Source: Phallusia mammillata
Lineage: Eukaryota
Assembly (NCBI GenBank): GCA_965637545.1
Contig: OZ281495.1
Span: forward strand, 2,728,001 to 2,792,000
DNA length: 64,000 nucleotides
Direction: 5' to 3'
Part shown: piece after piece, positions 10,018 through 63,936 of the stretch
Position numbering within the stretch: position 1 is the stretch's first letter
Layout of the letters: the number at the start of each line of letters is the position of its first letter
Notes under the pieces: model-generated
What the model was told of the DNA's origin: nothing
The model's input: the letters and a program-made list of their open reading frames with translations, nothing else
Databases searched by the model: none
Translations under genes and position numbers: made by a program

Positions 10018-10778
10018 TCACTTGGTCAACTTCGCTTTGCTGTTTTGCAATTTCCTTTCACTTATTGCAATCAATTTTTCTCGTTGTTCCTCAGTTATAT
10101 CCTCCGCTGTTTTGTAAACTTCGATCGCTTTTGTGTAACATTCGATTGCTTCTTTGATTCGTGAAGTTGTCTCACAAACAGCACCAAGATTGTTCAACAA
10201 GTGACCGTAGATGTAATACTTTGAACTTTCATTCCCGAACTTTGTTTCCATAAGTTCAAGTCCAAGTTTTATTGTTGTTTCACTCGATGCAAAATCACCG
10301 ATGTGATGTTGACTCACTTCAATGTGATGCAAACACCGAACCTCCTTTTTACATCGAATTTTTTCATTTATTTGAAGGTCACGGATTTGCTGAACCATGT
10401 CACGCATCAGTGGGATCACGTGATCGCGCACGATTTCTATGTTTCTCGACTCCGAAGATGAATCGGAATTTTTCATCAAATGTTCGATTGTTTTTCGAAT
10501 TTCCATCGCACAACCCACTACACTTTTCGCTACAGCGGAGTCGGGATTTTTGTTTGCATAGAAATCTGCGGCAACGCTAAACAACAAAATGGCTTCCAAA
10601 TATTCGCCGTCATCTCTAAATTTTGTGGCTTTTTCTTTCAGGTTTTCTGCAGTGACCCCTGGTTGACCAGTGATTGACCTTGAAAGTTGTTGTTTTGTCG
10701 TTTTTGCTTCGTCATATTTTTTTGTTTTTAATAAATCAACATAATTATCAATACGTTGATTGAATTCGTCAGTTTGAT
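10018..10778 (-). CDS. Unit 1 terminal exon, TPR-like helical domain
   Basis: Acceptor ttctctgcag|AT, phase 1; 59 open codons upstream of the ORF-track start; TPR motif YGHLLNNLGAVC...EAIECYTKAIEV. Confidence 0.88.
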
Positions 10779-13700
10779 CTGCAGAGAAACAAAAAAATAA
10801 TGTTTTTTTTTAGTTTCATGAAAAAAACAGTCTATTATACTTTGACATCGGTTCATGTAAATCAAAAGTGTTTTGAAAATAAATGTGTTTTTGAGTGTTA
10901 CGGTAAGGAACAATTATTTTAGTAATTAATTTATTTTAAAATCTAATCATTAAAAAACGATTGCGTGTTAAAATTTAAATCAAAACGTACGCTGTTAGTC
11001 TGTGTGACGTAATAACTAGGTTGTGACGACAAATGCTAAGTAACGATGCAGTTGTATGTTTGTTTTTATTTTGAATTGGGGATTTTTTTTCTCCAACCTG
11101 ATATCTGATTTCAAAGAAAATTGGATTTGCGTACAAAATAAACTTGTCATTTTTTTTTAATTTAAGCTGTTTAATTGGTTTTGGCATTGATTTTATCTTG
11201 GACCGCGGAAAATTACAAAACGTCTGTTGTGTAAATGAAACTGTTTGAAAACCACTGGCCTACAGGTATTTGAAAAAGTCAGTAGGCCCGACATAAGTGT
11301 CAATATAATGTTGGTTGGCCTTCACAAAATTAAACGTTCCCTATCCCTAAGCTAAACAAATAAAGTGTACAAAAAACTTAACAGATTTTGAACTTTACCT
11401 TTTGGTGGTCAGATTAAGTTCGCATTGTTTCATCACAATAATAATAATGTATCACACTTTGAGGGTGAATAAAACAAAAAACTTTATATTTTACAAGATA
11501 TTAATATTTTATCTGCTAATAACGCTGTGGGCCACGGAACATTGTGGACCGCGGGCAGCGTGTTAGAGACCTGTTGTCGAGGAGCGCGCAGAACAATTTG
11601 CATGTGAACCTGAAGCGCCAGACTGCTTCGTACCAAGCTGTGAGATAGAGGAGTCCTAGTAGGGCAACGACCTTTCTCTTGTTTCGGTGTTGATTTGCCG
11701 TGTCTGAATACAGTTAGCTGATACAAATTGGTTTGATGCCTTAATTTCCGTCGTTGCTATACAGGTTTCCCGGAGTGCAGTTTTGGCAAATATCTTTACG
11801 GATTTTTATTGCCCGATACTTTGTCGCGTTTTCATGGTAGAAAGTGTGAGTTGGACAACGGTCACGGCCTTTTTCGAATGAGAAGAGGTAAATTTGAAAG
11901 AAAACGCATCTGACTCATTATAGAGCAAAATGTCATATTATTTGGGACATCGTATCAGAGTTGCAAACGGGCCTGAAATTTCAGCCCGAAACCGGCCCGA
12001 ACCCGAATCGTTTTTTAGAAACCCGTTTAGGCCCGAAAGTTTAATTGACAGGCCTATACATTAACAAACAAACACAATCAACAATTGGTCTTGAACAAGG
12101 CGATTTAGGGTTGTTTGGCAATAGGCCAGGACCAGCAGCTGGCTACTCAGCTAGTCAAACTAAAAAAAATGGCACAGAGTGTAAAGTCAGGTCCGAATCA
12201 AGCCCGTTAATTTTAAGAAACCTAAAACCGAACACGTCCCGAACCCAGACCGAAACGCAAAAATTTACAGTCGTTATTGAAAAGAGTGGTCATACTCAGG
12301 CACAATAAAAGCTCCACCACTTTGCAGCCTTGCCTACACTAGAAAAAATGTTGGCTTATATTAGGCCAAAGCGGCTTGTCTTAAGCCAATTTGGCTTATA
12401 ATACGCCAAAAAGTACAATTGGCTAAATTTTAGCCTTGAAAATGGCTTATTTTAAGGTGGCCAGATCCAAGACACTTGATTGGCTCGAAACAAGCATTCT
12501 TGGCTTAAAGACGTGTTGCTTAAATCTGTTGGCTTGAAATAAGTCGCAAACCAAAACAAGCCGGCTAACTGTTAGCTAAAATTGGCTTGTTTTGCCCATG
12601 ACAGATTTAAGCCACTTGGTTGGCTAGAAATTAGTCAAACAATATTCTGCTTAAATTCGTTGGCTTGTAATGGGCCGTATTCCAAAAAGGCATCATTCAA
12701 GCTTAAAAAACCGCCCGAATTTAGTCCCGGATGTATAGCTAAAGCTAATGATGAACACAAATATGTGGCATCAAATATTCTGTCTGAGTTTTTAAGGAAT
12801 ACAGACCTTCGTTGATTTTTTTTCGCATGCAAATCATCGGCATTAACCCGATATATTTTTTGTGGGGATTTTATTTTATAGTATAATTGGTATAATAGTA
12901 TAATTTTTTTGAACCTAAGAAAAATACCACAGAAAAATGTTTTATTTTAGTTTGCATCAGAATCACCATTTTTAAAAATCTACTTTTAATCGTGTTGGTC
13001 CGGATTTACAATTATCGGGGTATTGCGCAACGTTGCGTCATCTGCCTCGTGCTGATGGCTGTTTTAAGTTCGCACTTTGTTCGTGTTTTTAAAGGAGTTA
13101 GGGTTTGTTAATATTTTGGAAAAAAGTCATAATAAGTATAAATAGATTTAATAAGTATAATAGATGTGTATGTTAAAAAATAAAAATGGAATTGGCCAGA
13201 AACGGAACGTGGTTGCGAAAGCTGGGAATACAGTGAAGACTGTTTGCGTCAACTAAAAGGTAAATTTTTGGGTGACACTAAAACGCTGAATGGGCGGGAT
13301 GGGCGGGACGTCGCGGAAACCGCTCAATATCGGGTAAATTGCTGACGGTTAGTGCTATTAGGGTTAGGTTGAGGTTTTATAATAGTATATGAATCAAAAA
13401 ATGTCCCTGCTTAAAACTTATTCAACTATTTCCTGACATTAGGCAAAAATGCTATGGCGGGACGTCGCGGGAGATGGCGGGACGTTTCGGGCGCGGAATG
13501 TAGTGTTCGGCGGAATTTTTTTTAATGATTTTCTATTATAAAACCTTATCCCAACCTTAATAGCTCCAACCGTCAGCAATTTAACCCGATATTTAGCGGT
13601 TTTCACGACGTCCCGCCCTCCATTCCGCCCGTCCCGCCCATTCAGCGTTTTAGTGTCACCCAAATTTTTCATTCAGGCTTTGAGAAGAATGAACATATTT

Positions 13701-16700: not shown

Positions 16701-19700
16701 ATTTATTTTTGATTTTGTAATTGTTCTTCAAAAAAGGGTGAAAACTTTCAACAATGTAACTTTCAGCATTGGTATACGATTGATAGAAGTTACAACCAGT
16801 CAATGCATGTTATACCCAGTTGCTGCGGGCTGCTGCTGGTGGAAGTCTCCCCTTGTTGAGGAAATGACTGTACATGCTCTTTTGCGCCATCTGTTGGTTC
16901 GGTTGATCGTTCCTCGGTGTCACCTGATGTGGAGGGCACTAAAATATTGGTGGTTTACTACTAGACACTTTTATACTGTATTGTTTCGTTTTGTAACAGA
17001 AGAATATTACTTATAAACATAGGTTATTTGCTAAAGAAGTGCCGGATTGATTTTGTTTGAGTTGTCAAATATTAACTTTCCACTAAAATATAGTGCGTAA
17101 GACTCCACATATTAAACAGTTGCAAGTGCAGTTGAGAGTTGGCTGCGTAAGCTTCATAACAGCGAAAAGGCCAACCTACGCTGACGGGTTACTGTATGTT
17201 TAAAAACGTTTACAAATTATAAAGGCGAGTTAAAGTTCGGTAAGCCCTGGAATGAAACCAATAGATATAAATCGACTAGTTTATGTTGTTGCTATTTTCT
17301 CGTCTAATCTACTTTCAGCAAAACATTAAAGTTTGAAATTTTCATCAGAAATGGAATAATGCTGTAGGAAGGTTCGTCGCACTTAAAAATTGATAAGGGC
17401 CTCGTTTATCCTGGTGAAAGGCTTTGTAGTTTATGAAAGTAAGAAAATCAAATAGTTGTCAAGTTGTGTTATATCAAAATGTCAATCAGGCGACGATATG
17501 AAAACTGTACACCAACATTCTACTCGTTTGGAAATTATTCGTTTTCTCATGAACGCTTTCGTTCATTTCTATCCATACATCTCTTACACTTACCTGTATT
17601 TTTCACTTCCTTGATTTCCAATATCTGGGTATAAAAATATATATTACAACGAAAGTTTTCCCACATCTGTTTTTAAGTTCACTTTATAAGTAAGCATTAC
17701 ATGCAATGGAACAAATGTAATCTAACCGGTGTCCACGACTGACCTTAAAACACTTCACACTGCGCTATCTGGTTTAACCTCTAAAAAAGTCCACAGCTAT
17801 ATAGGATTGAACGAAAATATTTAATAAACAGCAATATTTATAAGGACACGGTGAAGCTTTCTTCCTACAGAAACAATCAGGCTTTTAAACAGAATTTGAA
17901 ACTATAGGACCCAATGTAAATGGCACAGTTAATAAACTTCCAAACAAGATTACAGTTTTAAGATAAAAAGCCCGTTGTAGGTTTCCAATCTACAATCCAA
18001 CATAAGGATTTAACTTCAGTAAATTACTTGCCTTTTTTGCTTCTTCTTGAGCTGATTCTTCAGTGTTTTGAGATGCTGCTGATGTTGTTGGTGAGTCAAG
18101 TTCCTCAAGAGTGGTGGCGTAGTTTGTTGGAAAAACTCCTTCCTTTCCGTTGCATCGACCTCTGGCCCAACCTTCCTCCTCCTGTGTAATTGCAAGCAGA
18201 AAAAGTTTGACACAAAAGCTTTATAACCTATCTAAAGTTTTATTTTCTACCAATTTACCCAAGAATTTACCCATGTTCATGAAACTGGTAAACATTTTTT
18301 AAATTAACATTGTTTAGAATACTTGACCAATCACTTGACTGGTAAAAAAAGACAAACAATGTTACATCAATCAGAAATAATTGTTCCCCCATAGTGTAAC
18401 CGTTTTTGTAGAAACTGGTCTTGTGGACTCATTAATCGCTTTATTACAAAATAGGTGTAACGTTGTACATTATAACATGGTATTTCACATTTTTTATGTG
18501 TTGTTTATTTTTGTAGTGAAAATGTAGCATTGGGATCCAATAAATACTAAACCATAGGTACCCACATCATTATACACGTCGATTATGTCACCAACTTTCA
18601 ATTGCAGTTCATCGGCGTTTCCTGGTTCGTAGGAATAAGTAACTTCCATTCGTCGTAACACCTCCACATCTGACCACAATAAAGACGAATATTTTTAAGT
18701 CGATTTGCCATTAAACGATAAACGAAAAGTACGTTGTTGAAATATGTTCCAAGTAAAACAAAATAGTTTAACAAAAAATGTTTTTTGGGATTTACAGTAA
18801 GACAGATTTTTCACGAATTCCATTTTAACATCTCGATCAATAGCAAATGTCAAGACCAAATTTTTAAATTATAATTTTTGTTTGTAGAGTTTTGAATCAT
18901 AATGAGGATATTGATTTTGGAACCATGTGCAGCCAATATCTAGTGGACATGAACAAGCTTCTATGGGCCAAACGGGTTGGGGCACCAACAATTGTGGAAA
19001 ACGATGGCAAAACAAACTGACTTCGGAGGTAAAAACCTTTTTTAGAAAATTTAATTTTTTTGTCTTTTTTTGAATATTAGCTCATGATAAAACGTTAAAG
19101 TTTGTTACTACGCAATAAGACATGATGTTAAGTCGAGTTTTATCAAAAACAATAAATCACAGGTGGTTAGATTGTAGAGCCTCGCGACTGGTTCCTCCAT
19201 CGAGCCCCCTGACCCCTTTCAGTCGTGAGATTCCCACTCTGCGCCACATTCACTTTCCTGTGAGCCTGTCACATAACACCTCATAATACAGTGTAGATAC
19301 AATGCATAATGCCACTATCCACTAACTGTACCCGACACTTTTTAGCGCTCTGTAACGTGTTAACTGGAGATGTACCGAATATTCGGTTTGTCGAATTTAT
19401 TCAACCGAATCGGCTACTTTTGCAAAGATTCGGTTTCGGCCGAATAATTTTTTGCGATTCGTCCGAAACCGAGTCTTTTACAAACACACATGTAAAGCGT
19501 TAACGCTTTTCTTCTGCTTAGTACCTACTAAAATCGCGTCAATCATTATATTTTTAACACAATATCGCTTTTCCGACTGCAACAGCAATGCATTGTCGGG
19601 CTGCAAATAATGTTTAAGGCACTGTCAAACCCCACAGAACTAAAATGAGGACGAAACATTAATTGCCTGGTAAATAACTTATGTTTTCATGTCAAACGCG

Positions 19701-22700
19701 TAGGGCACGACTTTATCTGTGATTGGTTTACCTGTAGGTTGCTGTGGTGATGAGCTGCTGGAAGTAGGACGGTTTTCTGTAGGTAACCTTCCAATGTGTT
19801 TTCCTTATGTTACCTTTTCAGCGCTACATATTTATTTATTTCTCTCAATTGCAGATTTTCACGTAATATTGTCTTATTTGATTTATTTCACTGTTCGTTC
19901 TAGTTGCGTGCTTTGTTTCGCATTACCTCGCTGGATTTTTCGCATAAATAGTTGTCGCTCTCGGATGTGCCCAGTAACCTTCATAAATTGTTTTGGCCTA
20001 TGATTGGTCAACCTCCGGTCGGCAGACAGCAGTGTTTTGAGGGACGTTTAGTAAAAGGTCGATTTGCTATATCGATTTGACTTTACGTCGTGGTTATTTT
20101 TTATATATAGAGTATATTTAACTTGATACAATGTTTATTAGCCTATGGAAAAGTTAGGAAGAATCGCAGGGCTTCGTTTACAGAATTGGAAGGGGGCATA
20201 GAATATATTAGATTAGCAGGTTCTTTAAAGCGTTTTTGGTCCAGGTAACATGTGCATCTCATATCCTGGTACTTCTAACACAATGGACCAGAAAAACTTT
20301 TTTAGAAAAGTAATCACTATCACCTGTTTGAATGTTCGCGATTTACTTCATTTATTATTTTTTGGATATCTGGACTCTTTGTGGAATAATATGAACCAAC
20401 TGAACTTCACAAGTTCAGCGGTAAGCCCGTCAAATATCGAAACAAGCACTGTTGCCTGCAAGTCCAAGAAAGACTCTGTCGTGGGTTCGAGTCCCATCAG
20501 AGCCCTTGCCATTTGGAATGATCGGCTGGTTTGGTATACCGCGTTTAAAAGACTGATCCTAGTGATTTAGTTATAACTACGCCGTTATCACTGATCTGAA
20601 TAAACGCTTGAGGGTTGATCCCAGTTACGAAATTACGTGCATCCTAACTGCTTAGCTGTCAGGTTGTTGCTTAACTAAAGCTAAGTTTATTGATGTTACG
20701 AGAAATAACTTTAAACCGGCTCAGGCATAATCGCGGTCGTTCACACACATTTGCGTTAGTCAGGTCATAAGCTTCAAAACAAGCACACAAGTCCCAATTA
20801 TTTGATTCTACGTGTCCATAATTGGTTACCTGCAGGTTGCTGTGGTGATATGCTGTTGAAACGGGCGATCAACTTTTGTACGGACGGGTTGAATTTTTCG
20901 TCATCGTTTCTAATGGCGTCTGAACAAACAAATGGGTGAAATGTGTTTTTTTTCTCACTGCCTATAAGTATTCTTGGTAACAATACGTTTATCAATAACT
21001 AGAAGTTCCTACGAGCCAACGTATCTCATACCCGATTGCTGTGCATTGCTGCTAGTTGGAGTTTCTTCTTGTTCATAAGAAGGCAATTGTTTGTTTTTCT
21101 GTGAGGTGCCGGCTGATGCTAATGACAATAAATCATTGTTGGTTAAGTATTGGTGCTATTGTGTTACCTACAATGATTTTTGTTTTCGCCTATACATATT
21201 TTAATAAATATATAACTTATTTTCGGACCTATTTCCTCGTAAAGTTATACGAGTTGCCGCTAAACCAATATTGACTTTCCACCATACTGGCAACGCATGT
21301 TTGCTGTCGTTTAAGGCAGTGATTTTCAAAGTTTAACACAAATGGCAGAAATAGCTTTTCTTTCATAAAAGTAATTCTCCGCTATCACCACTTTGAATGT
21401 TTCTTCGTGATTTACATCATTTATTTTTGTGTAACAAACAGATTCGTCGTGAAATATTAAAAATATAATTGCGTGGGTCCGTTATCAATTGGTTGAGTGT
21501 GACATTGATTTTAATATGCGCCAAGTGTTCCGCGACTTAAAGTAGGTAAAACAAAAACTGGTAAATTTATAATGATTTTCTAAATTATCGGAATTTCCAT
21601 TATCGTTTTGTCCACCCCATACCTAGTTGCTGCGGTTTCCTGGATGTAGGAGTTTCCCCTTGTTGAGAAGAAGATGGTGACCGTACCACTTGTGCTTCAT
21701 ATATCGGTTTAATTGTCTTTTTTATGGCCGCACTTGTTGTAGAGGGGCCTGAAAGTTGATTGCTTATAGATATCTTTATTTAGTGAAGACATTTGCCTTG
21801 CTTTCCGAGAGAAATAAAACCAAGATTTATTTGAAACATCGTCTGTGCACCGAGTGAAATTGTTTGACGTTCGGTTGCCAAAAGACGAATATTGACTTTA
21901 CAACAAACTGGCAGAGGGCTGTTACGGCTTTATATTGACCTTTTTTAAATCTCAAAAGTTTTAAAAAACGATCGAACAAACAGCAATGTTACGACAAATA
22001 AAACAAAGTTTAATCAATGAAAAATAGTTTTGATTGATCAGATCGGAAATGGAAGACCTGCGGACATTTAGCTCTAAAAGTGCGCTCTGTATAGTTTTGC
22101 CGTTGTAAGAACCAAACCTTGGGATTACATTACACAAAATTGTTAGTGCGGCCTCGCGAGTAGTCAGGTGGCTTCATAAACTGAGCATCTCACCCTAGTT
22201 CTAGTACGGGGATGCTGAAGGTTTTATACGAAAAAACAATTGACATTGTTAAATCCTACTATTTTTTTTTTACTCTGGGAGGATTTTTTACCTTGCTGAG
22301 AAGAAGGCAACTCTTGTACGCCCTCCGCTGTTTCGCTTAACCGTCCTTCGGTTCCACCCGATGTGAAGGGCACTGAAATATAGATGGGTGATATGACAAA
22401 ACGACTTAATACCTTTAGATTTTTTTATGTTACTGTGTAACTTCTGAACCGCCAAGAAATATAACAGATCACATTGTCACATTATCTCTCAACTTAATTG
22501 TTTTGACTACCAGTTCCAAAGCGTCTCGGGCAAGGAAATCTGCTTCTACTCGGGGTTACTTCTTATTATAATAAATTTATATGTATTGACCGATTAATTT
22601 ACCGTGAAAACTTCCGGACCGGGGTGAAAAATGGTGAAGAGGGACGCGTCGACTTTCGCTGACTTGCGGTTGCTCGTCTAAATCCATTTGAGTCAGAGTT

Positions 22701-37071: not shown

Positions 37072-37200
37072 TGATGTTGCCTTGACTCATTTCATAGTAA
37101 TGCAAACACCAAACCTCCCATTTACATCGCATTTCTTCTTTTATTTGTAAGTTGCGAATTTATTGGACCATGTTACGCATCAGTGCGATCACGTGATCAC
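37072..37200 (-). pseudogene. Orphan fragment of a fifth TPR exon
   Basis: DHVIALMRNMVQ*IRNLQIKEEMRCKWEVWCLHYYEMSQ aligns to residues ~59-97 of the TPR ORFs; in-frame stop. Confidence 0.85.
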
Positions 37201-38610: not shown

Positions 38611-39365
38611 TTACTTGTTCAACTTTGCCTTGCATATTTGCAAACCCCTCTTAATTTTTGCAATCTCTTCTCCTCGTTGTTCCTCAGTTAAATCCTCCGC
38701 TGTTTTGTAGGCTTCGATTGCTTTTGTGAAATATTCGATTGCTTCTTTGAATTGTGAAGTGTTACCGCAAACAACACCAAGATTGCTCAACAAGTAACCG
38801 TAGATTGAATACTTTAAACTTTCATTCCCAAACTTTGTTTCCATAAGTTCAAGTCCTAGTTTTATTGTTGTTTCCCTCGATGCCAAATCCCCGATGTAAT
38901 ATTGACTCAGTTCAATGGAATGCAAACACCAAACCTCCATTTCACTTCGAATTTTTCCGTTTATTTGAAGGCAACGGATTTGCTGAGTCATGTCACGCAT
39001 TAGTGAGATCACGTGATCGCGCACGATGTCTTTGTTTCTCGTCTTTAAAGATGAATCAGAATTTTTCATCAAAAGTTTGATTGTGTCGCGAATTCCCTCT
39101 GCACATATCGCTACACTTTTCGCTACTGCAAAGCCGGGATTTTTCTTAACATGGAAATCTGCGGCAATGCTGAAAAATAGAATTGCTTGCAAATATTTGC
39201 TGTCATTTTTAAATTTTGTGGCTTTTTTTTCCAGGTTTTCTGCAGTGACCCCTGGTTGACCTGTGATTGACCTTGAAAGTCGTTGTTTTGTTGTTTTTGC
39301 TTTGTCATACTTTTCTGTTTTTAATAAATCAATATAGTTTTGAATGCGTTGGTTGAATTCGCCGT
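38611..39365 (-). CDS. Unit 2 terminal TPR-like exon
   Basis: ttttgcag|AC, phase 1; 57 open codons upstream of the ORF-track start. Confidence 0.88.
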
Positions 39366-51319: not shown

Positions 51320-52104
51320 TCACTGTTTTTGCAGCAAATTTGTAATTTTGTCCAACTTTGCTTTGTTGGATTTTAAATACCTTTCACCTTTTTCAATTCT
51401 TTCTTCTTTATCTTCCTCGGTTAAATCTCTCACTGATCTATAAACTTCGATTGCTTTTGTGTAATTTGCGTCTGCTTCTTCGAGTCGTGAAGTTTCCTCG
51501 CAAACAAAACCAAGATAGTTCAACAAGGTACCATAGATTCGATACTTCGAACATTCATTGCCAAATTTTGTTTCCATAAGTTCAAGTCCACGTTTTATTG
51601 TTGTTTCGCTCGATGTCCAATCCCTGATGTAATATTGACTCCAGGCAATACAACCCAAACAGCGAACCTCCCATTCGCATCGAATTTTTTGGTTAATTAG
51701 AAGATCGCTTATTTGCCGAGTCATGTCGTGCATCAGTGGAATCACGTGATTGCGCACAATTTTTTTGTTTTTTGACTTAAAAGTTGAATCAGATTTTTCC
51801 ATCAGAAGTTCTATTGTATCTCGAATTTCAAATGCACGGACAGTTACACTTCTCGCTACAGTAAGGTGAGGATTTTTCTTCGCATAGAAATCTGCGGCAA
51901 TGCGAAAAAACAAAATGGCTTTCAAATATTTGCCGTCATATCGAAGTTTTTTAGCTTTTCTGATTAAGTTATCCGCGGTGAGCCCTGGTAGTCCTTCGAT
52001 TGATTTTAAAAGTTGTTTTTTAATCTTTTCTGCTTTTCCAGCGTTTCCAGATATTAATAACTCAAAATAACTGTGTATGCGTTGGTTGAAGTCGACATTT
52101 CCAT
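51320..52104 (-). CDS. Unit 3 terminal TPR-like exon (most divergent copy)
   Basis: tttctcag|AT, phase 1; open for 261 codons to the stop. Confidence 0.85.
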
Positions 52105-52339: not shown

Positions 52340-52467
52340 CTAAACAAATATTAATTTTGATCAAATGTTTCGTTCAAAAATGTTGTTTAAAAACACTGAT
52401 TTTTTAGCGTTGCCAGTTATATATTTTAAACGATAACTACTTTCCAACGTTTCAATACATCTTATAC

Positions 52468-52578
52468 CAGGTTGCTGTTGTTGTGTTTTGAAGGTGGGAA
52501 ATTCCTCTCGTGTCTTTACGAGCTTACGTGCGCCTTTTGTTGGCTTAGTGGATTGTTTCTCACCTGATGTGGAGGGCA
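52468..52578 (-). CDS. Unit 3 type-A linker exon
   Basis: tttag|TG ... G|gtataa, 111 nt. Confidence 0.75.
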
Positions 52579-53073
52579 CTAAAAAAATTGTTGGTTCACA
52601 AGACAATAAGTTTGATAAAAGTCAATGCACTGTTAATTTTTCTTGTATAATGACAAAATGCATTCAGCTAAACTGTCCCGTTACCGAGTGAAATGGTTTT
52701 AGGTTTCGTTGGAAAAATGTTGACTTTCCACCAGCAGTGTACGATTTGCAGTTAAGCAACGCGTGGTGTTAAATGTTATTTCGCCAAACCAAGTACTTAG
52801 AATTTTCAGCTTAAGAGTAAAATTAGTTTCCTGATACTATTAAGTCTATTAGGCAAATCCGCTGCAAGTATTGAATTGATTGACAGAGACAAGGCGTTGT
52901 TATGCCTACTTACAACATACTTATGCTTTATTAATTTTGAACAATTTAAGAACCGTTGGACTTCCATTAAAGTATAGTTGATAACCGAAGCTTTGGGTTT
53001 GCAAGGTCAAACGCTTTAAAGTTAACAGACGAATTATTACTTTTCGCAACGTGCTGCTTTGTAATTGGTTTAT

Positions 53074-53160
53074 CTGCAGGTTGCTGTGGTGATGTACTGT
53101 CGAAACGAGCGATAAACTGTTGTAGTGATGTGATGGAACGCTTCTTGGTGACGATTGGAT
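53074..53160 (-). pseudogene. Type-B exon with destroyed donor (GT>AT)
   Basis: DPIVTKKRSITSLQQFIARFDSTSPQQPA G|ataaac instead of gtaaac. Confidence 0.7.
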
Positions 53161-53449
53161 CTAAACATAAATGACACTAAATTAATTACTTTACCCAAAA
53201 ATCTGAAAATCTTAATGTAGCTTTAAGCTTTCCCGATAACTACGAATTCAAAGTTACAAATTTATCTTATAACAGGTTGCGGTCCAATAACAAACTTTCC
53301 GTGACACGATTATAACAATGATTTTAAATTTGCTTTAAAAAAATGCTTTGTAGCTCCAAAGCCTGTGATAGAACATAATATCGTAATTTATTTTCAACTT
53401 CTAATAAATAACATAAATTTGTGATTTAATTGGCAAAAAATAAACTTAC

Positions 53450-53533
53450 CAGCAGGTTGCAGTGGTGATGTACTCCTGGAATGGTCAATTTCCTCTCGTG
53501 GGGGGCGTTTTTCGCCACCTTTACTGGTTGAAT
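53450..53533 (-). CDS. Unit 3 type-B' linker exon
   Basis: tttag|AT ... G|gtaagt, 84 nt. Confidence 0.75.
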
Positions 53534-55005: not shown

Positions 55006-55351
55006 CTAAACAAATTTTAATTTTGGCATAATAATTACAAAAACAGTCCGTCTTCTGCCTCAGTTTTCCTAAAACCATTTTAAGTTAGTTTAAGTTCGTA
55101 ATGTTGTTGCAGTTTCTTAGGAAAAATAGTAAGTTTATTTTTGTGCTGTTTTAGCGGCAGAGTGGCGAAAGACCCTAAGGTCACCTTATCAGCCACCCTC
55201 GATTTCAATACAGATACGTTTAATAAATTTAACCTTTATTAGGACAACTGTATGTTCTTACAGTTCAATTGATCCTGTATACAAGTGCTGTAATCTATTT
55301 CTACTTAAAGTTAATCTATTTACAAGAAAACATTTTTTTTTGTTATTTTAC

Positions 55352-55575
55352 CTTGAAATCTCTTGGTTCTGGGTGGCGATCTGTTCATAGTAACCGGTTA
55401 ATTTTCGCTTACTTGCGGTTAATCAAATCTATTTGAGTTAAATTCGTCAAAGATTGAAATTAGCTTAGTGGTCCTGCTTAAACTCGATCTGGTATTTTTA
55501 CTTGTTCTGGTCTTCAATTAAACATCCACGAAACCTCCTAAACCGGCCACGAATTTGAGGTTACAATGATGTCAA
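55352..55575 (-). pseudogene. Unit 3 kinase remnant: G-loop fused to C-terminal tail
   Basis: DI.CNLKFVAGLGGFVDV* followed within ~50 nt by TTKLIS...F D*PQVSEN*...RFQ G|gtaaaa; catalytic lobes deleted; terminal donor retained. Confidence 0.85.
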
Positions 55576-57546
55576 GTTAATCAAATAACTTTGCAACTAA
55601 AACGACTAAACTCGTAAGGTTTCTCTTTTACTTGTTTCGTTGTAGCCATCGTAACATCATTAAAGTTTTACACAAAATTCAGCCTGACAACCTGTTGCTG
55701 TGAAAACAGCTGATATCAGCGGGAATTAAACAAATATTAGCGCTCCTTCAAATTAACAACAGAAGCCTAATTTTCATTGAGCTGCTACAACTTTACGCTA
55801 CACTGATCACACAAATCGGCTGGCGAGTCGAGTTCTTGTTGGGGTTACCTGATACGGTCACGTGAGAAGTGACGTCATCAGTTGATATTCAACGGCTGAG
55901 CAGCGAAAGTCACGCTCTTAGCACAGAGGGTTAGCTTAAACTTCAAGGTACGGTAAACACAATGACTAACTTGAAAGGCCCATTTTCTATATATTGCTAA
56001 CTTGTATATTCTACTTCTTATTTAATCAGTATACCTCATACACCATTTGCTATACTCATATCCGATATAACTCATCTGTTACTTAAATTCATTAAGACTC
56101 TTATCTTTATTCGGCACTGACAATTTATAAAACCAGGTTCTAAGGAAACTAAAACGATCAAAACAAAACTATTCAATACCGAGAATGACTATAACTTATT
56201 TAGTTTATTTTTTCGTGAGAAATTATCATTACCACACAGAGGGTATTTGCTAACCTTGTGTCCCGTTGCCTATTGGTTTTGTTTGAAGTGTCAGTTGGCG
56301 CTTAACAAATATTGACTTTCCATCAAACTAATGTGCGTAAGATTCCAGATAATAACCGGTGCAAGTACAGTTAAGCGAAATCCTAGGCAACATGCAAAAA
56401 CGCCTAATCTTTTACACAAGAAATGCCATCGCTAAGCCAAATGCACTTTTCCTGTTATAGGTAGCCTATTTAAAGAACAAAAGGAGGAATAAACAAAACA
56501 AATCACCAAATTTACAACAAAAAACGCATGTTATACTGGGTTTTGTATTGCAATATTACATCAGTAACTTACACATTTAGCTTTAACAAAATCAGGTTCA
56601 ATATTTCATCTACAGCTTGGGGATATTGTACGACAACAAAACGTGAGGAAATGAGTGAACTCGGTAAACATTTTGTTTCTCTCGCTACGATTATCGTGTC
56701 TCGCATCCTACAGCGAACCGGACAGATTGCTTTCTTTCTTTTACTCTCGTCTTATGCTACGTATTCGTACGTTGTGTTCATCTATTTTCATGTATCTCGA
56801 ACAAACACCTCGCTACAATGTTGTTAGCCCTATTACCGTCAGCACTTTCGTACGCTTTATTAGTTCGCATCGATTGCCTGTTATAAAGTAGGCTGTAAAA
56901 ATGCTTGTTCTGTGCACTGTAAAATAGACATAAATTAAGCTAACCTAATGTTCAAACAATTAGCCTTTTTAGGATTTGTTAACAAACAAAAATTTACTCA
57001 TACAACTGGCAACTGGGAAATCAATGGTTGTTGTTAGCAACACTTCCGGGGACGTGGGAACATTTGGTCAGAGAGTTTTTTCTGCTTGGGTGCCTAAATA
57101 TTTACTTGGATATTTTTTAATAGAGTCGAAAGTTTTCTGTTTCGTGCCATGAATCGCTTTATCAATATTTAAAAGTATATTACTTGGTTTATTTAATGTA
57201 AAATGGCATTTAGTGTTTATTACAGAATCTTTCCCGTAAATAGTAGGCATCTTCTGTCGACGATCACGGATTAAATAGTGAATCATCTGTAAGAATAATT
57301 GATGAAGCAACAGCGCTTTCTAATCAAAATTAGTCAACAAATGTTATTTAACGATATATATTTCACCCGTAAGGGCATCGCAACCCCATATGGCGACTTG
57401 CTTTGCAATCAGACATTTAGCTGTTGTCCGCCAGATGTCAGCCCGGGAACACTTTAGTGGTTAATGTATTGTTTGCTGGAATGTTCCAATGTTGTTTGTC
57501 ATGTGTTTCATTTCGCATGACACAGTGATCAGTACCTTTTGATTTG

Positions 57547-58006: not shown

Positions 58007-58430
58007 CCACTTTTGGTCCACAGCGATAAAAACAAATTGAAACACTTGGAATCATTTAAGCCGAAATTGAGCGACAGATAGAAAGGGTTATGCAAAAACT
58101 TCAGGTTGGGTTTAATCATACCTGCTGTGATGTAAAAACATGTTTTGCGCTTCCTCATTATATGTGATCTGTGTGCCGTAAACATACTTACAAAACTTAT
58201 ATTCTCAAGCTGCTATATTCTATAAAGTAAAATATCTCCCCAAAACATTTTTCATCAATTTTTTGAAAAGTAAGTATAATTTTTACATTAGTACAAAAAA
58301 TCGTCACTAATATAAAGCAATTTTGCACAAAAAAGCATAATATTAAACATAAAATTAATTTACGGTATCAATTTGTTTCGCAATAATTTTATCACAGACA
58401 AACACTTTAGTTGTTTTGTAGCAACGTTAA

Positions 58431-59191
58431 TCACTTGTTCAACTTTGCTTTGGTTTCTTGCAAACCAACCTCACTTGTCGCAATATATTCTCCTCGCTGT
58501 TCCTCAGTTAAATCCTCCGCTGTTTTGTAAACTTCGATTGCTTTTGTGTAATATTCGATTGCTTCGTTTAATCGTAAAGTTTTCTCAAAAGCATCACCAA
58601 GATTGTTCAACAAAGAGCCGTAGATAGAATACTTTGAACTTTCATCCCCGAACTTTGTTTCCATAAATTCAAGTCCAAGTTTTATAGTTGTTTCCCTCGA
58701 TGATAAATCCCCGATGTAATATTGACTCAGTTCAATGTTATGCAAACACCGAACCTCACAATAACATCGAATTTTTTCGTTTATTTGAAGGTCGCGGATT
58801 TGCTGAGTCATTTTACGCATCAGTGGGATCACGTGAACACGCACAATTTCTGTGTTTCTCGGCTTCGAAGATGAATCAGAAGTTTTCATCAAAAGTTTGA
58901 TTGTTTCTCGAATTTCCAGCGCACACACAACTACACTTTTCGCTACAGTAAAGTCGGAAAATTTCTTCACATAGAAATCTGCGGCAATACTAAAAACCAA
59001 AATGGTTTCCAAATATTGGCCTTTATTTCTAAATTTCGTGGCTTTTTCTTCCAGATTTTCTGCAGTGGCTCCCGGTTGACCTGTGATTGACCATAAAAGT
59101 TGTTGTTTTGTCGTTTTTGCATCGTCGAGTTTTTTTGTTTTTAATAAATCAACATAATTTTGAATGCGTTGATTGAATTCGTCGGTTTGGT
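58431..59191 (-). CDS. Unit 4 terminal TPR-like exon
   Basis: tccctgcag|AC, phase 1; 59 open codons upstream of the ORF-track start. Confidence 0.88.
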
Positions 59192-62100
59192 CTGCAGGGA
59201 AATAAAAAAAGATGTTTTTATTTTAGTTTCAAGAAATAAAAAACAAAAAAAAAAAACTGATCGTAATTTGACACCGGTTCATGTAAAGCCATTTTATAGT
59301 AATAAATGTGTTTTAGTGTTAAATACCAAAAAATTTTAAATTTAACTTTTAAATAACCCTGACATAATAACAAGGTTTTGACGACATAATGCTAAATATT
59401 TGGTTTTTTGCAGTGTGACATTTTGTCTCCAATTTAGTAAAAAAGTTAAAACAAAATTATTTTTTGTACGAAATCAGCTTGTCAGTTTTGTCTCCCACTA
59501 GAGCCAGAGCTATTGACATGTTTGTCACATTCTAAGATACAAACAGGAATTTTGTTGTTTTAAAAGCAGGCCTAGTATCAGGAATAATACGAATATATTA
59601 TTTCCCAATGATAAAATTCTAACGTGGTGTAAGTTTAAAACAATTTATGGATCAAAATACCCTATAGTTACTTTGGAAAATAGTTGCATTTAGGCAAAAT
59701 TAGTGGTTTAATTTTTGGATAATTTAAGATAAGATATAAACAGACGTAGGCTAAATCACACTTTTGGGCGTAACATCTCTTCTCCAATATGTTAACAATT
59801 TTGCTTTAACCCACTCATTGATATCACGTAGGCCCGTCTTTAATCAATAATTTTTAAGAACGCTCTGACAAAATTTCGAATTTCGTTGGAAACATTTTTG
59901 CTGTTTCACGCCCGCTGCACCTAAAAGTTCCACTGCTTCATGTTTTGTGACGAAAATAAATAAAAACAAATTTATGACGTCAAACTCATATTATAGGATT
60001 CACGAAGTTTATTACGACAATTTCGATTTAATTTTTGATTGACAGCAAAAAAGGTGCTGCAATCGGCATCATTAACAACGGTAAGGTTTAAACAAAGTTA
60101 AATTAGTGTTTGCAAGATCTAAAGTTTCTGTCGTGACTGATACGATCTAAAAAAATGGTAAATTGACAATTGACCGTTTACAAATTCGGAAACGCTTTTT
60201 TACTCGTTAAAACATAACCGTTAACAGGATAAGCTCCCATACCAGATAGCTGCTTCTGAGAATTACCATTCGTTGAAATTAGGTTTCTACTGCCTTATGT
60301 CTCTCTGTAGGTTTGTTTGATTGTTTAGTTAGTTTTCCCGGGATAAATTGGCAAAGACACAAAAATGACTTTTTTTACAACGACAATTTAATTGGTAGTT
60401 AAGTGTCAAAAGAGTAGATATTAGTATCGACGTCAACAAACATGTGGAATTACATTAAGATCCTCACAGCAAATTAGTTACAATTAATCAATTAAGCTTA
60501 ATTGACAGTTGGCAATGTGTTGCAATACGTGATTGACAACAAACTAATTTACTATTTCGTTGCTAGAACCATAATAATTTCAAAACTGGTTGGCTGTTAA
60601 GTTCGGAAAAAAATACGGACAACAAAAAACGTTATATTTGCAGCTTTTGGATGCCAGTAGGCTACACAAGATCAAATCCACTTTACCTACAGGTTGCTTT
60701 GGTGATGTTTTGCCAAAACGGGGGAATATCTTTTGTAAGAATGTTGTCGAGCGTTTCTTGGAATTTTGTCTGATAGGATCTACAGAAAAATAGAATTTTA
60801 AACGATAAATATTTCTTTGACGACATATAGACAATATTTCTGTTGGTGATTGTACTTTTTTCTTTTGTTTTGAAAAGGTGCATTTGCAACTCTTAGCAAC
60901 TGTTTGTTGGTTTACCTGCAGGTTGCTGTGGTGACGTGCTGCTGGAATGAGCGAATTCCTCACGTGGTGGCATTAGTCTTTTCTCGTCACCGTCTCTAAA
61001 CGGATCTAAAAAACATAGATTAAGAATAAAATAGTATTTTAGAAAAATCATTCATCCAATGCAAACAAATCGTTAAAATTATGATGACCCTTGTGCGCCC
61101 CTTGTTGGTGCATCAGAACGTTCCTTATTGTCATCTGAAGTGGATGGAACTAAAAATCTCACATTCACCATTATGGTACGCAATAAAAAATGTGTACTTA
61201 TGAAACCAGATTGAAGAAAAACATATTTTGCACGCCGTGGGGTAGACCTGGCACACACAAACTCTACAGTTGATTTTCCTTATTTGAGTCCATTGACTCG
61301 GTGTTTAGAACTAGATAAATATTAATTTTCCATTAAACTGGTTGTGGCTTGTTGCAAATAAATTTTCATTGACGGCTTTACAAACATCCATGTTCGGGCT
61401 ATTGTAGAAACTATGACTTTGTTGTTGGTTTACCTGCAGGTTCCTGTGGTGATGTGCTGCTGGAATGAGCGATTTCCTCTCGTGGTGCAATGGGCATTTT
61501 CTCATCATCGTGTATGATAGGATCTAAAGATTATAAATTCGAACAAGATGATTTTCAAAAAAAATGTTTGCAAATACGTTTGTCACAGAGTAATCAAATG
61601 TAATAAATTCAATCAACATGTTTAATTATCTCTAAGTTCCCGAGTTAATGCATCTCATACCAGGTTCCTGTGGTTTGCTGGTGGTGGGAATTTCTTCTTG
61701 TTGAGAAAAACGGGATTGTGATTGCTTTGGTGCGCCCCCCGCTGGTTTGATAGAACGTTTCTTTGCGTCATCGGAAGTGGATGGCTCTAAAAACATGTTT
61801 TACAAATATACACTATTTAATTTATGTTGCAAGATTAGTTTGTGTTTTCCTTTCTGATTATGTTTTGTTTTTCCTAAATAATTCCCAACAACTGTCAAGT
61901 TATCATTTAAAAACTTTCCGTTAAAAGTTAAAACGTTCAGGTGAAACTGTGTCAGTTGCCAGTGATTCTTAACCTTTTCTGTTCTCGAAATGGTTGTGCT
62001 TTATACCAACCATTAACTAGCGCAATAAAACGTGTCATTATCAAAACAGATTAAAGGTTCTGGACCCACGAAAACATATTTTCTTTCTTTTGAGTCCATT

Positions 62101-63936
62101 GCCCCGTGGTTTAGAACTAGTAAAATTTATTTTTTATCAAACTGGTGCTGGATTGTTGCTTGTAAATGGTTATTTCTTCCTATTCTTTTTCACGTCTTAT
62201 CATATACTTAGCTTTTGTAACGTCAAGTGCACGAAAATCAAAACACGGACCAATTTGTGCAAAGTGTGAATTTGTGATGGTTATACCTCCAGATTGCTGT
62301 GCTGATATGCTGTTGAAACGAGCAATTAACTTTTGTACTGGTGTAGTGGAGCTTTCCGCGGTACCGTGACTAGTGGGATCTAAATCAATTAAAAATTTAC
62401 ACAAAACGTTTGTTTGATATTGCTCTACACTCAAAACAGCTAAAAAGTGTCATAAATGTAACTGTTGACATTATCAGTTGAGCGAAATTCCATTCAATAG
62501 ATCTTGTACCCTTCTGCTGTTTTCTGCTGGATGTAGAAGCTTTGCCTTGTTGGGAAGAAGATTGCACTTGCTCTAGTGCCCCCTCTGTCGGTCCCGATGG
62601 TTGTCTATCGGTGTCAACTGATGTGGAAGGAACTAAAAATAAGAAAGATTTTACTACCACAGTTAAAATTGCCACACAAGAAATGGCAACATCTTAACCA
62701 ACAACATTATTAGGATAAAATAAGTTTCTACGAGACAAATTATCTCCAACCTGGGTAATGTATTCTGTTATGGGTGGGAGTTATCGTTTGTTAAAATAAT
62801 TTTCTATTGTTCTATTACTATTTTACCATGAAAACTTCCGGACCAGGTTGAAAAATAGTGAAGAGGAACGCGTCGACCTTCGATGACTTGCGGTTGCTCG
62901 TCCAAATTCATTTGAGTCAAAGTCGTCAAAACTTGAGAAAGTAGCTTGGTGGTTTGTTGCTTATCCAAACGCGTTTTCAATTCTTTTTTTATTTCAGTCA
63001 TTGTGGGACGTTTTGTGGGATCTTGATCCCAGCATCGCTTCATCAGTAGTTGGAGTTGCTCTGCGATTTCTTTGTCTTCACCGACCAAAGTTTGCATCCA
63101 ATCCCGTATTTGTTGGCAGTTTGGTCTTTTTCCTCTCTTAATTTCCTCTAACAACTCTCTTCGCTCTTCTTCTGCCAGACGTGGATACGGGGCTTTACAA
63201 GCAAGAACCCAGTATAATATCATAGCAAATGCGTAAACGTCATGTTCCTTGTTAGGTTTTGTGAGAAGATCCTTTAGTTTTTCAGGAGCGGTGTAGTAGG
63301 GAGTGTATTGAGGCTTTTCTTTCTTGGTTCGTGCCAAAGGATTCCTAGTTGCCGAAATACTATAAGTTGCCAGTTCGGCGCTTCCAAAATCAGCCAATTT
63401 ACAGCTTAGTGCTTTAGTGAGCAAAATATTTCCAGGTTTTAAGTCCTGATGAATTAAACGTTTATCGGGCAAATTATGACAGAAAGCCATTGCTGATGCT
63501 ATTTCGTATAAAATACGAACGCGTACGGCAATGCCCAGTTCTTTGGATGTATCGATTAGTAGTGTTTCTAAATTTCCCCCCTTGCAGTATTCCATCACAA
63601 TTCCCATTGCAAAAGACCATTGGACGTAGCCAAAAATTCGAACGACATTTTCATGATCTGCTTTCAGCAAGTGTTCCATTTCTTCTTTAATTCTGAAGAA
63701 CATATTTTGAATAAAGTGCCTGTGGCGATTTTATTGTGTTGTGTAGGAATTCTTATAACTTACGTTTTTGTGGCTTGTGTCTTTTCCTGGGCTCCACCAG
63801 CCAACTTAAATACTTTGATGGCAACTTGTTGCTTTAACCCATTGTGGTATCCAAATATAACATCCCCGAAACCTCCTGAACCGGCCATGAAATCGTCAAG
63901 GTTACAAGTGATGTCACCACAGTCCAATTCCCTTAA
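58431..63936 (-). CDS. Unit 4 gene model: RIPK-like kinase - A-B-A-B'-B'-C - TPR-like domain (start exon outside window)
   Basis: Exons 63764-63936, 62827-63692, 62510-62632, 62287-62379, 61661-61786, 61434-61523, 60916-61005, 60687-60779, 58431-59191 sum to 2415 nt = 805 codons. Confidence 0.78.
61079..61149 (-). other. Half type-A exon ending in a stop codon
   Basis: tttag|TT CCA TCC ACT...GGG TCA TCA TAA; acceptor intact, donor half deleted. Confidence 0.65.
62827..63692 (-). CDS. Unit 4 main kinase exon
   Basis: IHQDLKPGN, LADFG, YTAPE; ttcag|A, G|gtaaaa. Confidence 0.93.
63764..63936 (-). CDS. Unit 4 kinase N-lobe exon
   Basis: gcgcag|TTA; GSGGFG, VAIK; AC|gtaagt; 71-nt intron follows. 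Confidence 0.92.

What the first reader, a model, noticed from the sequence alone, without database searches (positions are those of the whole stretch)
10018..63936. Tandem family of RIPK-like kinase - shuffled linker - TPR fusion genes: candidate diversified immune sensor-kinase system
Seen: four minus-strand units in the same order (kinase, short linker exons, TPR-like exon). Hand-assembled exon chains close in one frame (2868, 2022 and 2415 nt). Established: vertebrate RIPKs end in death, CARD, RHIM or ankyrin domains, not TPRs, and TPRs act as sensor domains in fungal and bacterial NLR-like proteins. Inference: a lineage-specific, birth-and-death family of one-chain sensor-kinases, conceptually like plant kinase-fusion resistance proteins. 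I do not know this architecture from the literature but cannot search for it.
Basis: partly seen in the sequence, partly recalled or inferred. Interest (0 to 1): 0.92.

Follow-up and report, generated by a model that had tools for sequence, protein, structure and literature searches.

The report
Sea-squirt RIPK-like kinases with TPR tails
This stretch of a sea-squirt genome holds a tandem cluster of genes that each join an immune-type (RIPK1-like) protein kinase, through a flexible linker made of repeated mini-exons, to a helical TPR docking domain known only from sea squirts; the gene structure is real, and I found no paper describing it, but an immune-sensor role is untested.

Summary
The observation largely holds. 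On the minus strand there are three complete units: a RIPK1-like kinase in two exons, then 123-nt and 90-nt phase-1 linker exons, then a 755-761-nt terminal exon. A fourth unit lacks the main kinase exon and keeps only a relic.

The terminal exon folds as an 11-helix TPR solenoid (pLDDT 97). Three lines support one chain:
- two Phallusia mammillata transcript-derived proteins run from kinase end through linker into TPR;
- an unrelated metagenome contig has the same kinase-to-TPR order, with the same splice position and phase;
- the TPR exon has a conserved acceptor and no start codon of its own.

All named relatives of the TPR domain are ascidian. It also ends membrane-receptor-like, stand-alone and long disordered proteins, so a shared docking module is at least as likely as a ligand sensor. 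It evolves faster (dN/dS 0.5-0.6) than the kinase (0.2-0.27).

Immune function is inference only. No paper describing the family was found. This scan reached a similar reading earlier on other DNA of the same genome (s1-364006). Window 1-8774 is a near-perfect inverted copy of part of unit 4, next to an assembly gap.

The parts
63764..63936 (-). Unit 1, kinase N-lobe exon (173 nt; GSGGFG glycine loop, VAIK lysine)
   Evidence: tblastn. Acceptor GCGCAG| and donor |GTAAGT. A contig of run X3 (guessed RNA, a paralog) leaves the genome within two codons of this acceptor; allowing for a TTA CGA / TTA AGG paralog difference I place the junction at the acceptor, and the contig continues upstream into ATG GCA TCA ACA AAT GAA (MASTNE).
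62827..63692 (-). Unit 1, main kinase exon (866 nt; HQDLKPGN, DFG, APE; ends ...SFH+G|GTAAAA, phase 1)
   Evidence: Pfam Pkinase 6.4e-38; RIPK1 is the best PDB hit, 1.5e-30; motifs; splice sites.
62510..62632 (-). Unit 1, linker exon type A (123 nt, phase 1-1, 'VPSTS...')
   Evidence: matches P0156 residues 70-123.
61661..61786 (-). Unit 1, linker exon type A (126 nt)
61434..61523 (-). Unit 1, linker exon type B (90 nt, '...AHSSSTSPQEPA')
   Evidence: a contig of run X4 (guessed RNA) lies on 61434-61494.
60916..61005 (-). Unit 1, linker exon type B (90 nt). It belongs to a roughly 520-nt tandem duplication of an A+B exon pair.
58431..59191 (-). Unit 1, terminal exon: 253-aa TPR solenoid plus stop codon
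   Evidence: Conserved acceptor; AlphaFold2 pLDDT 97.3, 11 helices; Foldseek hits to LGN/Pins, KLC and NASP TPR domains; contigs of runs guessed to be RNA lie on the exon.
55632..55649 (-). Unit 3, candidate 5' exon (ATG + 5 codons, MATTKQ|GTAAAA). Inferred.
55505..55574 (-). Unit 3, relic of the kinase N-lobe exon (81% identical, 70 against 75 nt). The main kinase exon is missing.
52441..53533 (-). Unit 3, linker exons (type A from 52578 to a donor at about 52441; type B 53450-53533; B-like 53041-53160)
51320..52104 (-). Unit 3, terminal TPR exon. Intact, most divergent (59-60% aa identity to the others), with a C-terminus 8 aa longer.
46657..46674 (-). Unit 2, candidate 5' exon (MTSANE|GTAAAT). 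Inferred; with it the chain is exactly 2022 nt.
42619..42791 (-). Unit 2, kinase N-lobe exon
41700..42562 (-). Unit 2, main kinase exon (863 nt)
   Evidence: Pfam Pkinase 1.2e-36.
41391..41513 (-). Unit 2, linker exon type A (123 nt)
40873..40962 (-). Unit 2, linker exon type B (90 nt)
38611..39365 (-). Unit 2, terminal TPR exon
37082..37204 (-). Relic of a further TPR exon (41 aa, about 61-63% identical to the middle of the domain)
25121..25138 (-). Unit 4, candidate 5' exon (MTSPKE|GTAAGC). Inferred.
24051..24223 (-). Unit 4, kinase N-lobe exon
22603..23468 (-). Unit 4, main kinase exon (866 nt; HQDLKPEN)
   Evidence: Pfam Pkinase 6.7e-35.
16816..22372 (-). Unit 4, linker region. It holds an A-like exon 22292-22372, B exon 20830-20919, A exon 16816-16938, and an A-like module near 16034-16156 (found by tblastn, boundaries not resolved). 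It also holds an SH3 domain split over two exons (18562-18669 and about 18086-18202).
   Evidence: Pfam SH3_1 matches profile positions 3-27 and 25-48 on the two halves.
10018..10778 (-). Unit 4, terminal TPR exon
   Evidence: 69.6% identical to P0156 residues 257-513.
1..8774 (+). Inverted copy (99.989%) of 14117-22890, covering unit 4's linker and the 3' end of its kinase exon. It abuts the N gap at 8775-8974. Probably an assembly artefact or a very recent palindrome.

Best explanation
The cluster is a tandem, birth-and-death family of ascidian genes. Each gene encodes one cytosolic chain.

- N-terminus. A very short N-terminus is followed by a RIPK1-like, non-RD (HQD) kinase that is predicted to be active.
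- Linker. A disordered linker rich in Ser, Pro and Gln follows. Its length varies because it is built from tandemly duplicated phase-1 exons of 123 nt and 90 nt.
- C-terminus. The chain ends in a 253-aa TPR solenoid of five and a half repeats.

Shown: the exon anatomy, the kinase class, the TPR fold, the restriction of all named relatives to ascidians, and the reuse of the same TPR exon in other proteins.

Inferred: the TPR takes the place that the death domain and RHIM hold in vertebrate RIPK1. It would act as a protein-docking module that binds a partner protein or peptide in its groove. That binding would recruit the kinase to partner complexes, or release it from self-inhibition. Candidate partners include the membrane proteins that end in the same domain. 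Paralogs would differ mainly in docking specificity and linker length. Whether the pathway serves immunity, cell death or development is not known.
For: One chain:
- Phallusia mammillata transcript-derived proteins P0156 and P0006 begin inside the kinase C-lobe and run through linker modules into the TPR domain. P0156 maps colinearly on the window's exons. Their origin as a de novo embryonic transcriptome, named by best Ciona hit, is inferred from PMC7237864.
- Metagenome contig L008 has N-lobe exon, main kinase exon and TPR exon on one strand. Its donor lies after ...SFRL+G and its acceptor is CAG|AT, the same position and phase 1 as here. That holds at only 36% kinase identity and about 32% TPR identity.
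- All four TPR exons share the acceptor. None has an in-frame ATG before about residue 100.
- Unit 2 closes as 2022 nt / 673 aa with canonical splice sites.

Kinase: RIPK1 is the best PDB hit for both the window kinase and the L008 kinase. GxGxFG, VAIK, HQDLKPxN, DFG and APE are all present. dN/dS is 0.20-0.27.

TPR: pLDDT 97.3 and 11 helices. The nearest folds are the peptide-binding TPRs of LGN/Pins, KLC1/2 and NASP.

Shared module: the same domain sits at the C-terminus of Phallusia proteins with a cysteine-rich ectodomain and a hydrophobic membrane span. It also ends Ciona stand-alone proteins and Styela long disordered proteins. The receptor-type copy nests inside the kinase-type clade (clade support 100/99; inner fork 93/90).
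Against: - No read or contig from this genome spans a kinase-to-TPR junction. The runs guessed to be RNA gave only short exon contigs, many from paralogs.
- P0156 and P0006 come from a short-read assembly consolidated in peptide space, which could make chimeras within a multi-copy family.
- The docking role rests only on fold resemblance and domain reuse.
- The TPR has dN/dS 0.52-0.63, and its odd-numbered helices vary more than the even ones (0.86 against 0.54 bits, six sequences). Both fit a diversifying sensor equally well.
- No kinase-fused member was found in Ciona or Styela, so the fusion may be restricted or repeatedly lost.
- The 5' exons in the window are candidates only.
Confidence: 0.6

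Rival explanations
1. The TPR would be a hypervariable sensor that binds non-self or danger ligands directly and switches on the attached kinase. That would make a one-chain immune receptor-kinase, comparable to plant kinase-fusion resistance proteins.
For: - The TPR exon evolves two to three times faster than the kinase (dN/dS 0.52-0.63 against 0.20-0.27).
- Among close paralogs the odd-numbered helices are more variable. In TPRs generally those helices line the groove; I did not check this on the model.
- The family shows tandem birth and death.
- The kinase is RIPK1-like and non-RD.
- Exon bins draw 20-80 times the summed contig depth of intron bins in two runs that behave as DNA. That hints at many copies, though it is not a copy number.
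Against: - No expression or challenge data exist. The only transcripts come from embryos.
- dN/dS stays below 1 throughout, and no site test was possible with four sequences.
- The same domain also ends membrane proteins that already have an ectodomain, and it occurs as stand-alone proteins. That suits an adaptor better.
- The nearest folds bind endogenous peptides.
Confidence: 0.2
2. The TPR would be an intramolecular regulator. It would bind the protein's own linker motifs (the repeated PSTS and SSTSPQQPA modules) or the kinase domain, and so hold the kinase off until it is released. This resembles self-inhibited TPR proteins and plant BSK kinases.
For: - The linker consists of repeated, conserved short motifs.
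- The nearest folds, LGN and KLC, are known from general knowledge to be self-inhibited by their own peptide motifs.
- The kinase plus C-terminal TPR layout is that of BSKs.
Against: - L008's gene seems to have no linker exons at all.
- The receptor-type proteins lack these modules yet keep the TPR.
- No structural or binding test was possible with these tools.
Confidence: 0.2
3. Kinase and TPR would be separate neighbouring genes, or the array would be decaying pseudogenes or an assembly artefact. The Phallusia fusion proteins would then be chimeric assemblies.
For: - No junction-spanning read from this genome was seen.
- Stand-alone TPR proteins exist in Ciona and in transcript-like contigs.
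- Unit 3 lacks a kinase.
- There is an inverted duplication at an assembly gap.
Against: - The TPR exons have a conserved acceptor and no start codon of their own.
- The phase-1 donor of the kinase exon matches the phase-1 acceptor of the TPR exon, both here and in L008.
- Two independent Phallusia models show the join.
- All reading frames are intact with dN/dS well below 1.
Confidence: 0.07

Closest known systems
Vertebrate RIPK1 (and RIPK2-4)
   Same: The kinase domain is most similar to RIPK1 (E 1.5e-30, about 25 bits above RIPK4). The catalytic loop is non-RD, the kinase sits at the N-terminus after about 20 residues, and a long disordered middle region follows.
   Different: No RHIM-like tetrad was found, and the Pfam scan of the kinase and TPR exons listed no death, CARD or ankyrin domain. 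The C-terminus is a TPR solenoid. A published survey found no RIPK1 homolog (kinase + RHIM + death domain) in tunicates (PMC12119088). Orthology was not tested by phylogeny.
Amphioxus RIPK-like expansion with shuffled domains (PMC9573974)
   Same: It is a lineage-specific tandem expansion of RIPK1-5-like kinases in an invertebrate chordate, with swapped accessory domains. These include SH3, which unit 4 also carries.
   Different: The amphioxus combinations listed are LRR, DEATH, ZU5, Zalpha and SH3. No TPR is reported, and tunicates were not analysed.
Plant BSK kinases (receptor-like cytoplasmic kinases, subgroup XII)
   Same: An N-terminal kinase with C-terminal TPR motifs that mediate protein-protein interaction; some members act in immunity (PMC6336344; PMC5478731).
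   Different: There is no sign of common descent of the fusion. The kinase here is RIPK1-like. The TPR is a domain family in which all named members are ascidian, and a modular exon-built linker lies between kinase and TPR.
Peptide-binding TPR domains of LGN/Pins, kinesin light chain and NASP
   Same: They are the best structural matches (Foldseek E about 1e-4, TM 0.5-0.6). All are helical solenoids that hold a partner peptide in the concave groove.
   Different: Sequence identity is only 13-18%. Only one repeat (residues 134-167 of the ORF) is recognisable by Pfam, and it scores just under the cut-off.
Plant tandem-kinase and kinase-fusion resistance proteins; bacterial Ser/Thr kinase-TPR proteins
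   Same: A kinase is fused to a recognition or interaction domain. Bacterial kinase-TPR and kinase-NTPase-TPR proteins appeared among the distant TPR hits.
   Different: These are analogies only. The bacterial hits match through generic TPR repeats, not through the ascidian domain. No effector recognition is shown here.

Membership tests
RIP kinase family (RIPK1-like) | Kinase domain closest to RIPK kinases | tested here: met
   phmmer against PDB gave RIPK1 1.5e-30, RIPK4 6e-23, RIPK2 2e-20 and RIPK3 1.6e-17, with the nearest non-RIPK kinase at about 1e-17. The L008 relative also hits RIPK1 best.
RIP kinase family (RIPK1-like) | C-terminal RHIM and death domain (RIPK1), CARD (RIPK2) or ankyrin repeats (RIPK4/5) | tested here: not met
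   No [IV]Q[IVLC]G tetrad occurs in the rebuilt chains. Pfam finds only TPR on the terminal exon and SH3 in unit 4. The other linker exons were not scanned against Pfam.
RIP kinase family (RIPK1-like) | Orthology to a vertebrate RIPK shown by phylogeny | not tested
   No reference kinase set was available as stored sequences. Only the ranking of PDB hits is available.
Active protein kinase | Glycine loop, VAIK lysine, catalytic HxD...N, DFG and APE motifs | tested here: met
   GSGGFG, VAIK, HQDLKP[GE]N, DFG and APE are present in all three kinases. The loop is non-RD (HQD).
TPR (tetratricopeptide-like helical solenoid) | Stacked helix-turn-helix repeats | tested here: met
   AlphaFold2 gives pLDDT 97.3, pTM 0.93 and 11 helices. 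The top Foldseek matches are TPR domains. Pfam TPR_1 scores 27.3 bits against a cut-off of 27.8, for one repeat only.
NLR/STAND-type receptor | Central NACHT or NB-ARC NTPase domain | tested here: not met
   The Pfam scan of the kinase and TPR exons listed no NTPase domain. The rebuilt chains consist only of kinase, linker and TPR exons.
Plant BSK (RLCK-XII) | N-terminal kinase plus C-terminal TPR in one chain | tested here: met
   The architecture matches (PMC6336344). This is a resemblance of layout, not of descent.
Plant BSK (RLCK-XII) | Kinase and TPR homologous to those of BSKs | tested here: not met
   No BSK is among the 60 best PDB hits of the kinase. Full-length relatives of the TPR domain that carry a name are all ascidian.

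The most novel reading that the evidence does not exclude
The ascidian-specific TPR exon would be a new signalling adaptor that took over the job of the death domain. It would sit on the cytoplasmic tails of cysteine-rich membrane receptors and on RIPK1-like kinases, and couple the two by TPR-mediated assembly. Its groove would diversify among dozens of paralogs. That would amount to an uncharacterised recognition pathway (immune or allorecognition) in the sister group of vertebrates.
Probability: 0.17. Interest if true: 0.85.

Novelty: new variant of a known kind. Interest (0 to 1): 0.62.

Why it matters
Tunicates are the closest living relatives of vertebrates. A published survey found no RIPK1 homolog (kinase + RHIM + death domain) in them (PMC12119088). 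This family shows that RIPK1-like kinases do exist there, in many copies, wired to a different interaction domain. If the TPR proves to link membrane receptors to these kinases, it would show how a core cell-death and inflammation kinase can be re-plugged into a new receptor system by exon shuffling. The symmetric phase-1 exons make such shuffling easy. It would also give a tractable model, in Ciona or Phallusia embryos and haemocytes, for testing what the kinase does without a death domain. The family additionally defines a TPR domain type that no Pfam model captures beyond a single repeat scoring just under its cut-off.

Tried and rejected
- All three word-index protein searches added almost nothing. 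The TPR region of P0151, the whole of P0006 and the kinase exon returned only P0002, P0156, P0006, P0167 and one lizard RIPK3. The index does not reach relatives at 30-40% identity, and full-length fusions fall outside the length window for exon-sized queries.
- Read laying gave only contigs. Runs X1 and X2 cover introns as well as exons and so behave as DNA. Runs X3 and X4 are only guessed to be RNA, and their contigs were too short to span kinase to TPR. The one informative piece was a 5' continuation, from a paralog, that I place at the N-lobe acceptor.
- The exact 5' exon sequence from that contig is not in the window at up to 3 mismatches. A looser scan found one candidate per unit. About 1-3 such hits are expected by chance, so they are marked as inferred.
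- The regions upstream of units 2 and 4 share only a repeat with stop codons, not coding exons.
- The Ciona locus of P0008 shows two tandem TPR exons and no kinase. The loci of P0023 also lack a kinase within about 10 kb.
- The ESM Atlas feature search returned only generic TPR clusters.
- The Ciona LOC identifiers occur in no searchable paper.
- I considered an NLR-like reading and rejected it because no NTPase domain is present.
- I considered that the 193-aa 'ORFs' are stand-alone genes and rejected it. Their listed start is a TTG inside a longer open frame that begins at a conserved splice acceptor.
- The N run at 8775-8974 was left as it is.

Full report
**What is in the window**

The sequence is eukaryotic, with 33-39% G+C. 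The closest proteins anywhere are from the ascidian Phallusia mammillata (66-72% identity), followed by Ciona intestinalis and Styela clava. The window therefore comes from an ascidian in or near Phallusia.

tblastn with the window's own exons finds the following, all on the minus strand:
- three main kinase exons (62827-63692, 41700-42562, 22603-23468);
- three N-lobe exons (63764-63936, 42619-42791, 24051-24223);
- four TPR-like terminal exons (58431-59191, 51320-52104, 38611-39365, 10018-10778);
- a 41-aa TPR relic (37082-37204).

The unit ending at 51320 has no main kinase exon. It keeps only a 70-nt relic of the N-lobe exon at 55505-55574. So there are three complete units and one kinase-less unit, not four alike.

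**Gene anatomy**

- The N-lobe exon (173 nt) starts in phase 0 behind a clean acceptor and ends AC|GTAAGT in phase 2.
- The main exon (863-866 nt) ends ...SFH+G|GTAAA in phase 1.
- All four terminal exons begin behind a conserved polypyrimidine-CAG acceptor, also in phase 1. Conservation rises sharply at that point.
- Between them lie canonical AG...GT exons in phase 1-1. Type A is 123/126 nt ('VPSTS...') and type B is 90 nt ('...AHSSSTSPQQPA'). They alternate as tandem duplicates of an A+B pair.
- Unit 4 alone also carries an SH3 domain split over two exons.

One contig of run X3, which is only guessed to be RNA and comes from a paralog, leaves the genome within two codons of the N-lobe acceptor. 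The two codons upstream read TTA CGA in the contig against TTA AGG in the genome, both Leu-Arg. I therefore take them as paralog variation and place the junction at the acceptor. Upstream of that the contig continues into ATG GCA TCA ACA AAT GAA. If so, the start codon sits in a tiny 5' exon and the kinase begins about 20 residues from the N-terminus.

A loose scan finds one such candidate exon upstream of each of units 2, 3 and 4: MTSANE, MATTKQ and MTSPKE, each followed by GTAA. About 1-3 such hits are expected by chance, so they are marked as inferred.

With that exon, unit 2 assembles into 2022 nt = 673 aa, with canonical sites throughout and no internal stop. Unit 1 gives 742 aa without its 5' exon, which lies beyond the window. 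Unit 4 closes too. Because all linker exons are symmetric, frame closure cannot tell which of them are used.

**Is it one chain?**

Three independent lines say yes.

1. *Transcript-derived proteins.* Two Phallusia mammillata proteins, P0156 (515 aa) and P0006 (359 aa), start inside the kinase C-lobe ('MKRCWDQDPTKRP...'). They run through PSTS and SSTSPQQ modules into the TPR domain.
   - P0156 maps colinearly on the window: residues 1-71 on the kinase exon end (66%), 72-111 on a type A exon, and 257-513 on the terminal exon (69.6%).
   - The records are named after the best Ciona hit. That is how the de novo embryonic transcriptome of PMC7237864 was annotated, so I take that study as their source. 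This link is my inference.
2. *A distant genomic relative.* Contig L008, from a metagenome assembly of unknown organism, carries three exons on one strand: an N-lobe exon with its own ATG, a main kinase exon, and a TPR exon.
   - The kinase exon is 36% identical to ours and again hits RIPK1 best.
   - The donor is ...SFRL+G|GTATAA and the acceptor TTTCAG|AT. Position and phase are the same as here, and there seem to be no linker exons.
3. *No independent start.* The TPR exons have no in-frame ATG before about residue 100. The '193-aa ORFs' start at a TTG inside a longer open frame.

Against this, no read from this genome spans the junction. The Phallusia models also come from a short-read assembly of a multi-copy family.

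**The parts**

*Kinase.* Pfam Pkinase scores 1e-35 to 6e-38. The best solved relatives are RIPK1 (1.5e-30), then RIPK4, RIPK2 and RIPK3. All catalytic motifs are present, with HQD in place of HRD. Paralogs show dN/dS 0.20-0.27. No RHIM-like tetrad was found.

*TPR exon.* Pfam sees one TPR just under its cut-off. AlphaFold2, run with a 48-sequence alignment, gives an 11-helix solenoid at pLDDT 97.3. The nearest folds are LGN/Pins, kinesin light chain, NASP and 14-3-3, all of which bind partner peptides. dN/dS is 0.52-0.63, and the kinase-less unit behaves like the rest. Among six close paralogs the odd-numbered helices vary more than the even ones (0.86 against 0.54 bits). That is a weak hint of groove diversification; I could not check the geometry.

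**Relatives of the TPR domain**

A full HMMER scan of 1.84 billion representative proteins finds the whole domain, always at the C-terminus, in 68 of the proteins listed. Every one that carries a name is ascidian. Four architectures occur:
- kinase-linked (Phallusia, L008);
- membrane-receptor-like, with a cysteine-rich ectodomain, a hydrophobic span and a short tail (P0002, P0151);
- stand-alone proteins of 300-420 aa, in Ciona and in transcript-like contigs;
- long disordered proteins of Styela.

In a maximum-likelihood tree the window's four copies, kinase-type P0156 and receptor-type P0151 form one clade (100/99). The receptor-type copy lies inside it, at a fork with 93/90 support. The exon has therefore moved between gene types recently.

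**Interpretation**

The functional claim does not follow yet. A domain that caps both receptors and kinases behaves like an adaptor, following the logic of the death domain or the TIR domain. Its nearest folds dock endogenous peptides. I therefore rank 'docking module that recruits or regulates a RIPK1-like kinase' first, 'direct hypervariable sensor' second, and 'self-inhibitory TPR' as a compatible variant. No evidence bears on immunity itself. The only expression data are embryonic.

**Literature**

- PMC12119088 reports that no RIPK1 homolog (kinase + RHIM + death domain) was found in tunicates.
- PMC9573974 describes amphioxus RIPK-like expansions with shuffled domains, SH3 among them, but no TPR, and it did not analyse tunicates.
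- Plant BSKs are the known kinase plus C-terminal TPR layout.
- No paper holds the Ciona locus names, and four further searches found no description of this family.
- The scan's own earlier follow-up (s1-364006) reached a similar reading on other DNA of this genome.

**Caveats**

Window 1-8774 is a 99.989% inverted copy of 14117-22890 ending at the N gap. Unit 4's structure needs long-read confirmation. Summed contig depth over the exons is 20-80 times that of introns in two runs that behave as DNA. This suggests many paralogs but is not a copy number.

Noticed in passing
window 1-8774 (+) against 14117-22890, with the N gap at 8775-8974: An 8.8-kb inverted duplication at 99.989% identity ends exactly at the assembly gap. 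It is probably a misassembly or a very recent palindrome. It duplicates unit 4's linker, its SH3 exons and the 3' end of its kinase exon.
   Followed up: partly
window 49784-50725 (-), 34786-35256 (+), and 47500-49800 against 26400-29740: Retroelement debris lies between the units. There is a 313-aa ORF with a GIY-YIG match (6e-05, possibly Penelope-like), a reverse-transcriptase fragment (RVT_1, 9e-16), and a roughly 2.3-kb repeat shared by the regions upstream of units 2 and 4. Such repeats could drive the unequal crossing-over that builds the array.
   Followed up: partly
window 18562-18669 and about 18086-18202 (-): An SH3 domain is split over two exons inside the linker of unit 4 only. 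Amphioxus RIPK-like kinases are also reported with SH3 (PMC9573974).
   Followed up: partly
window 51320-55649 (-): The kinase-less unit 3 keeps an intact TPR exon under the same constraint as the others. It also keeps linker exons, a candidate 5' exon and an N-lobe relic. The phases would not let its own 5' exon reach the linker, so it may serve as an alternative 3' cassette of unit 1 or be freshly disabled.
   Followed up: partly
L008:3564-7224 (+): A metagenome contig of unknown origin (42.7% G+C) holds a compact gene of RIPK1-like kinase plus TPR, without linker exons and with the start codon in the N-lobe exon. It may show the ancestral, linker-free form.
   Followed up: partly
L001:12400-12951 and 21013-21567 (+): In Ciona intestinalis two TPR-domain exons lie in tandem with no kinase nearby. 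A 1277-aa Ciona model (P0001) strings four such domains together, which may be a merged gene model.
   Followed up: no
window 58394-59169 against 62856-64000, runs X3 and X4: In the two runs guessed to be RNA, summed contig depth on the TPR exon is far higher than on the kinase exons. X4 covers the TPR exon only. TPR-bearing transcripts of the family, possibly the receptor-type or stand-alone forms, may therefore be more abundant than kinase-bearing ones.
   Followed up: no
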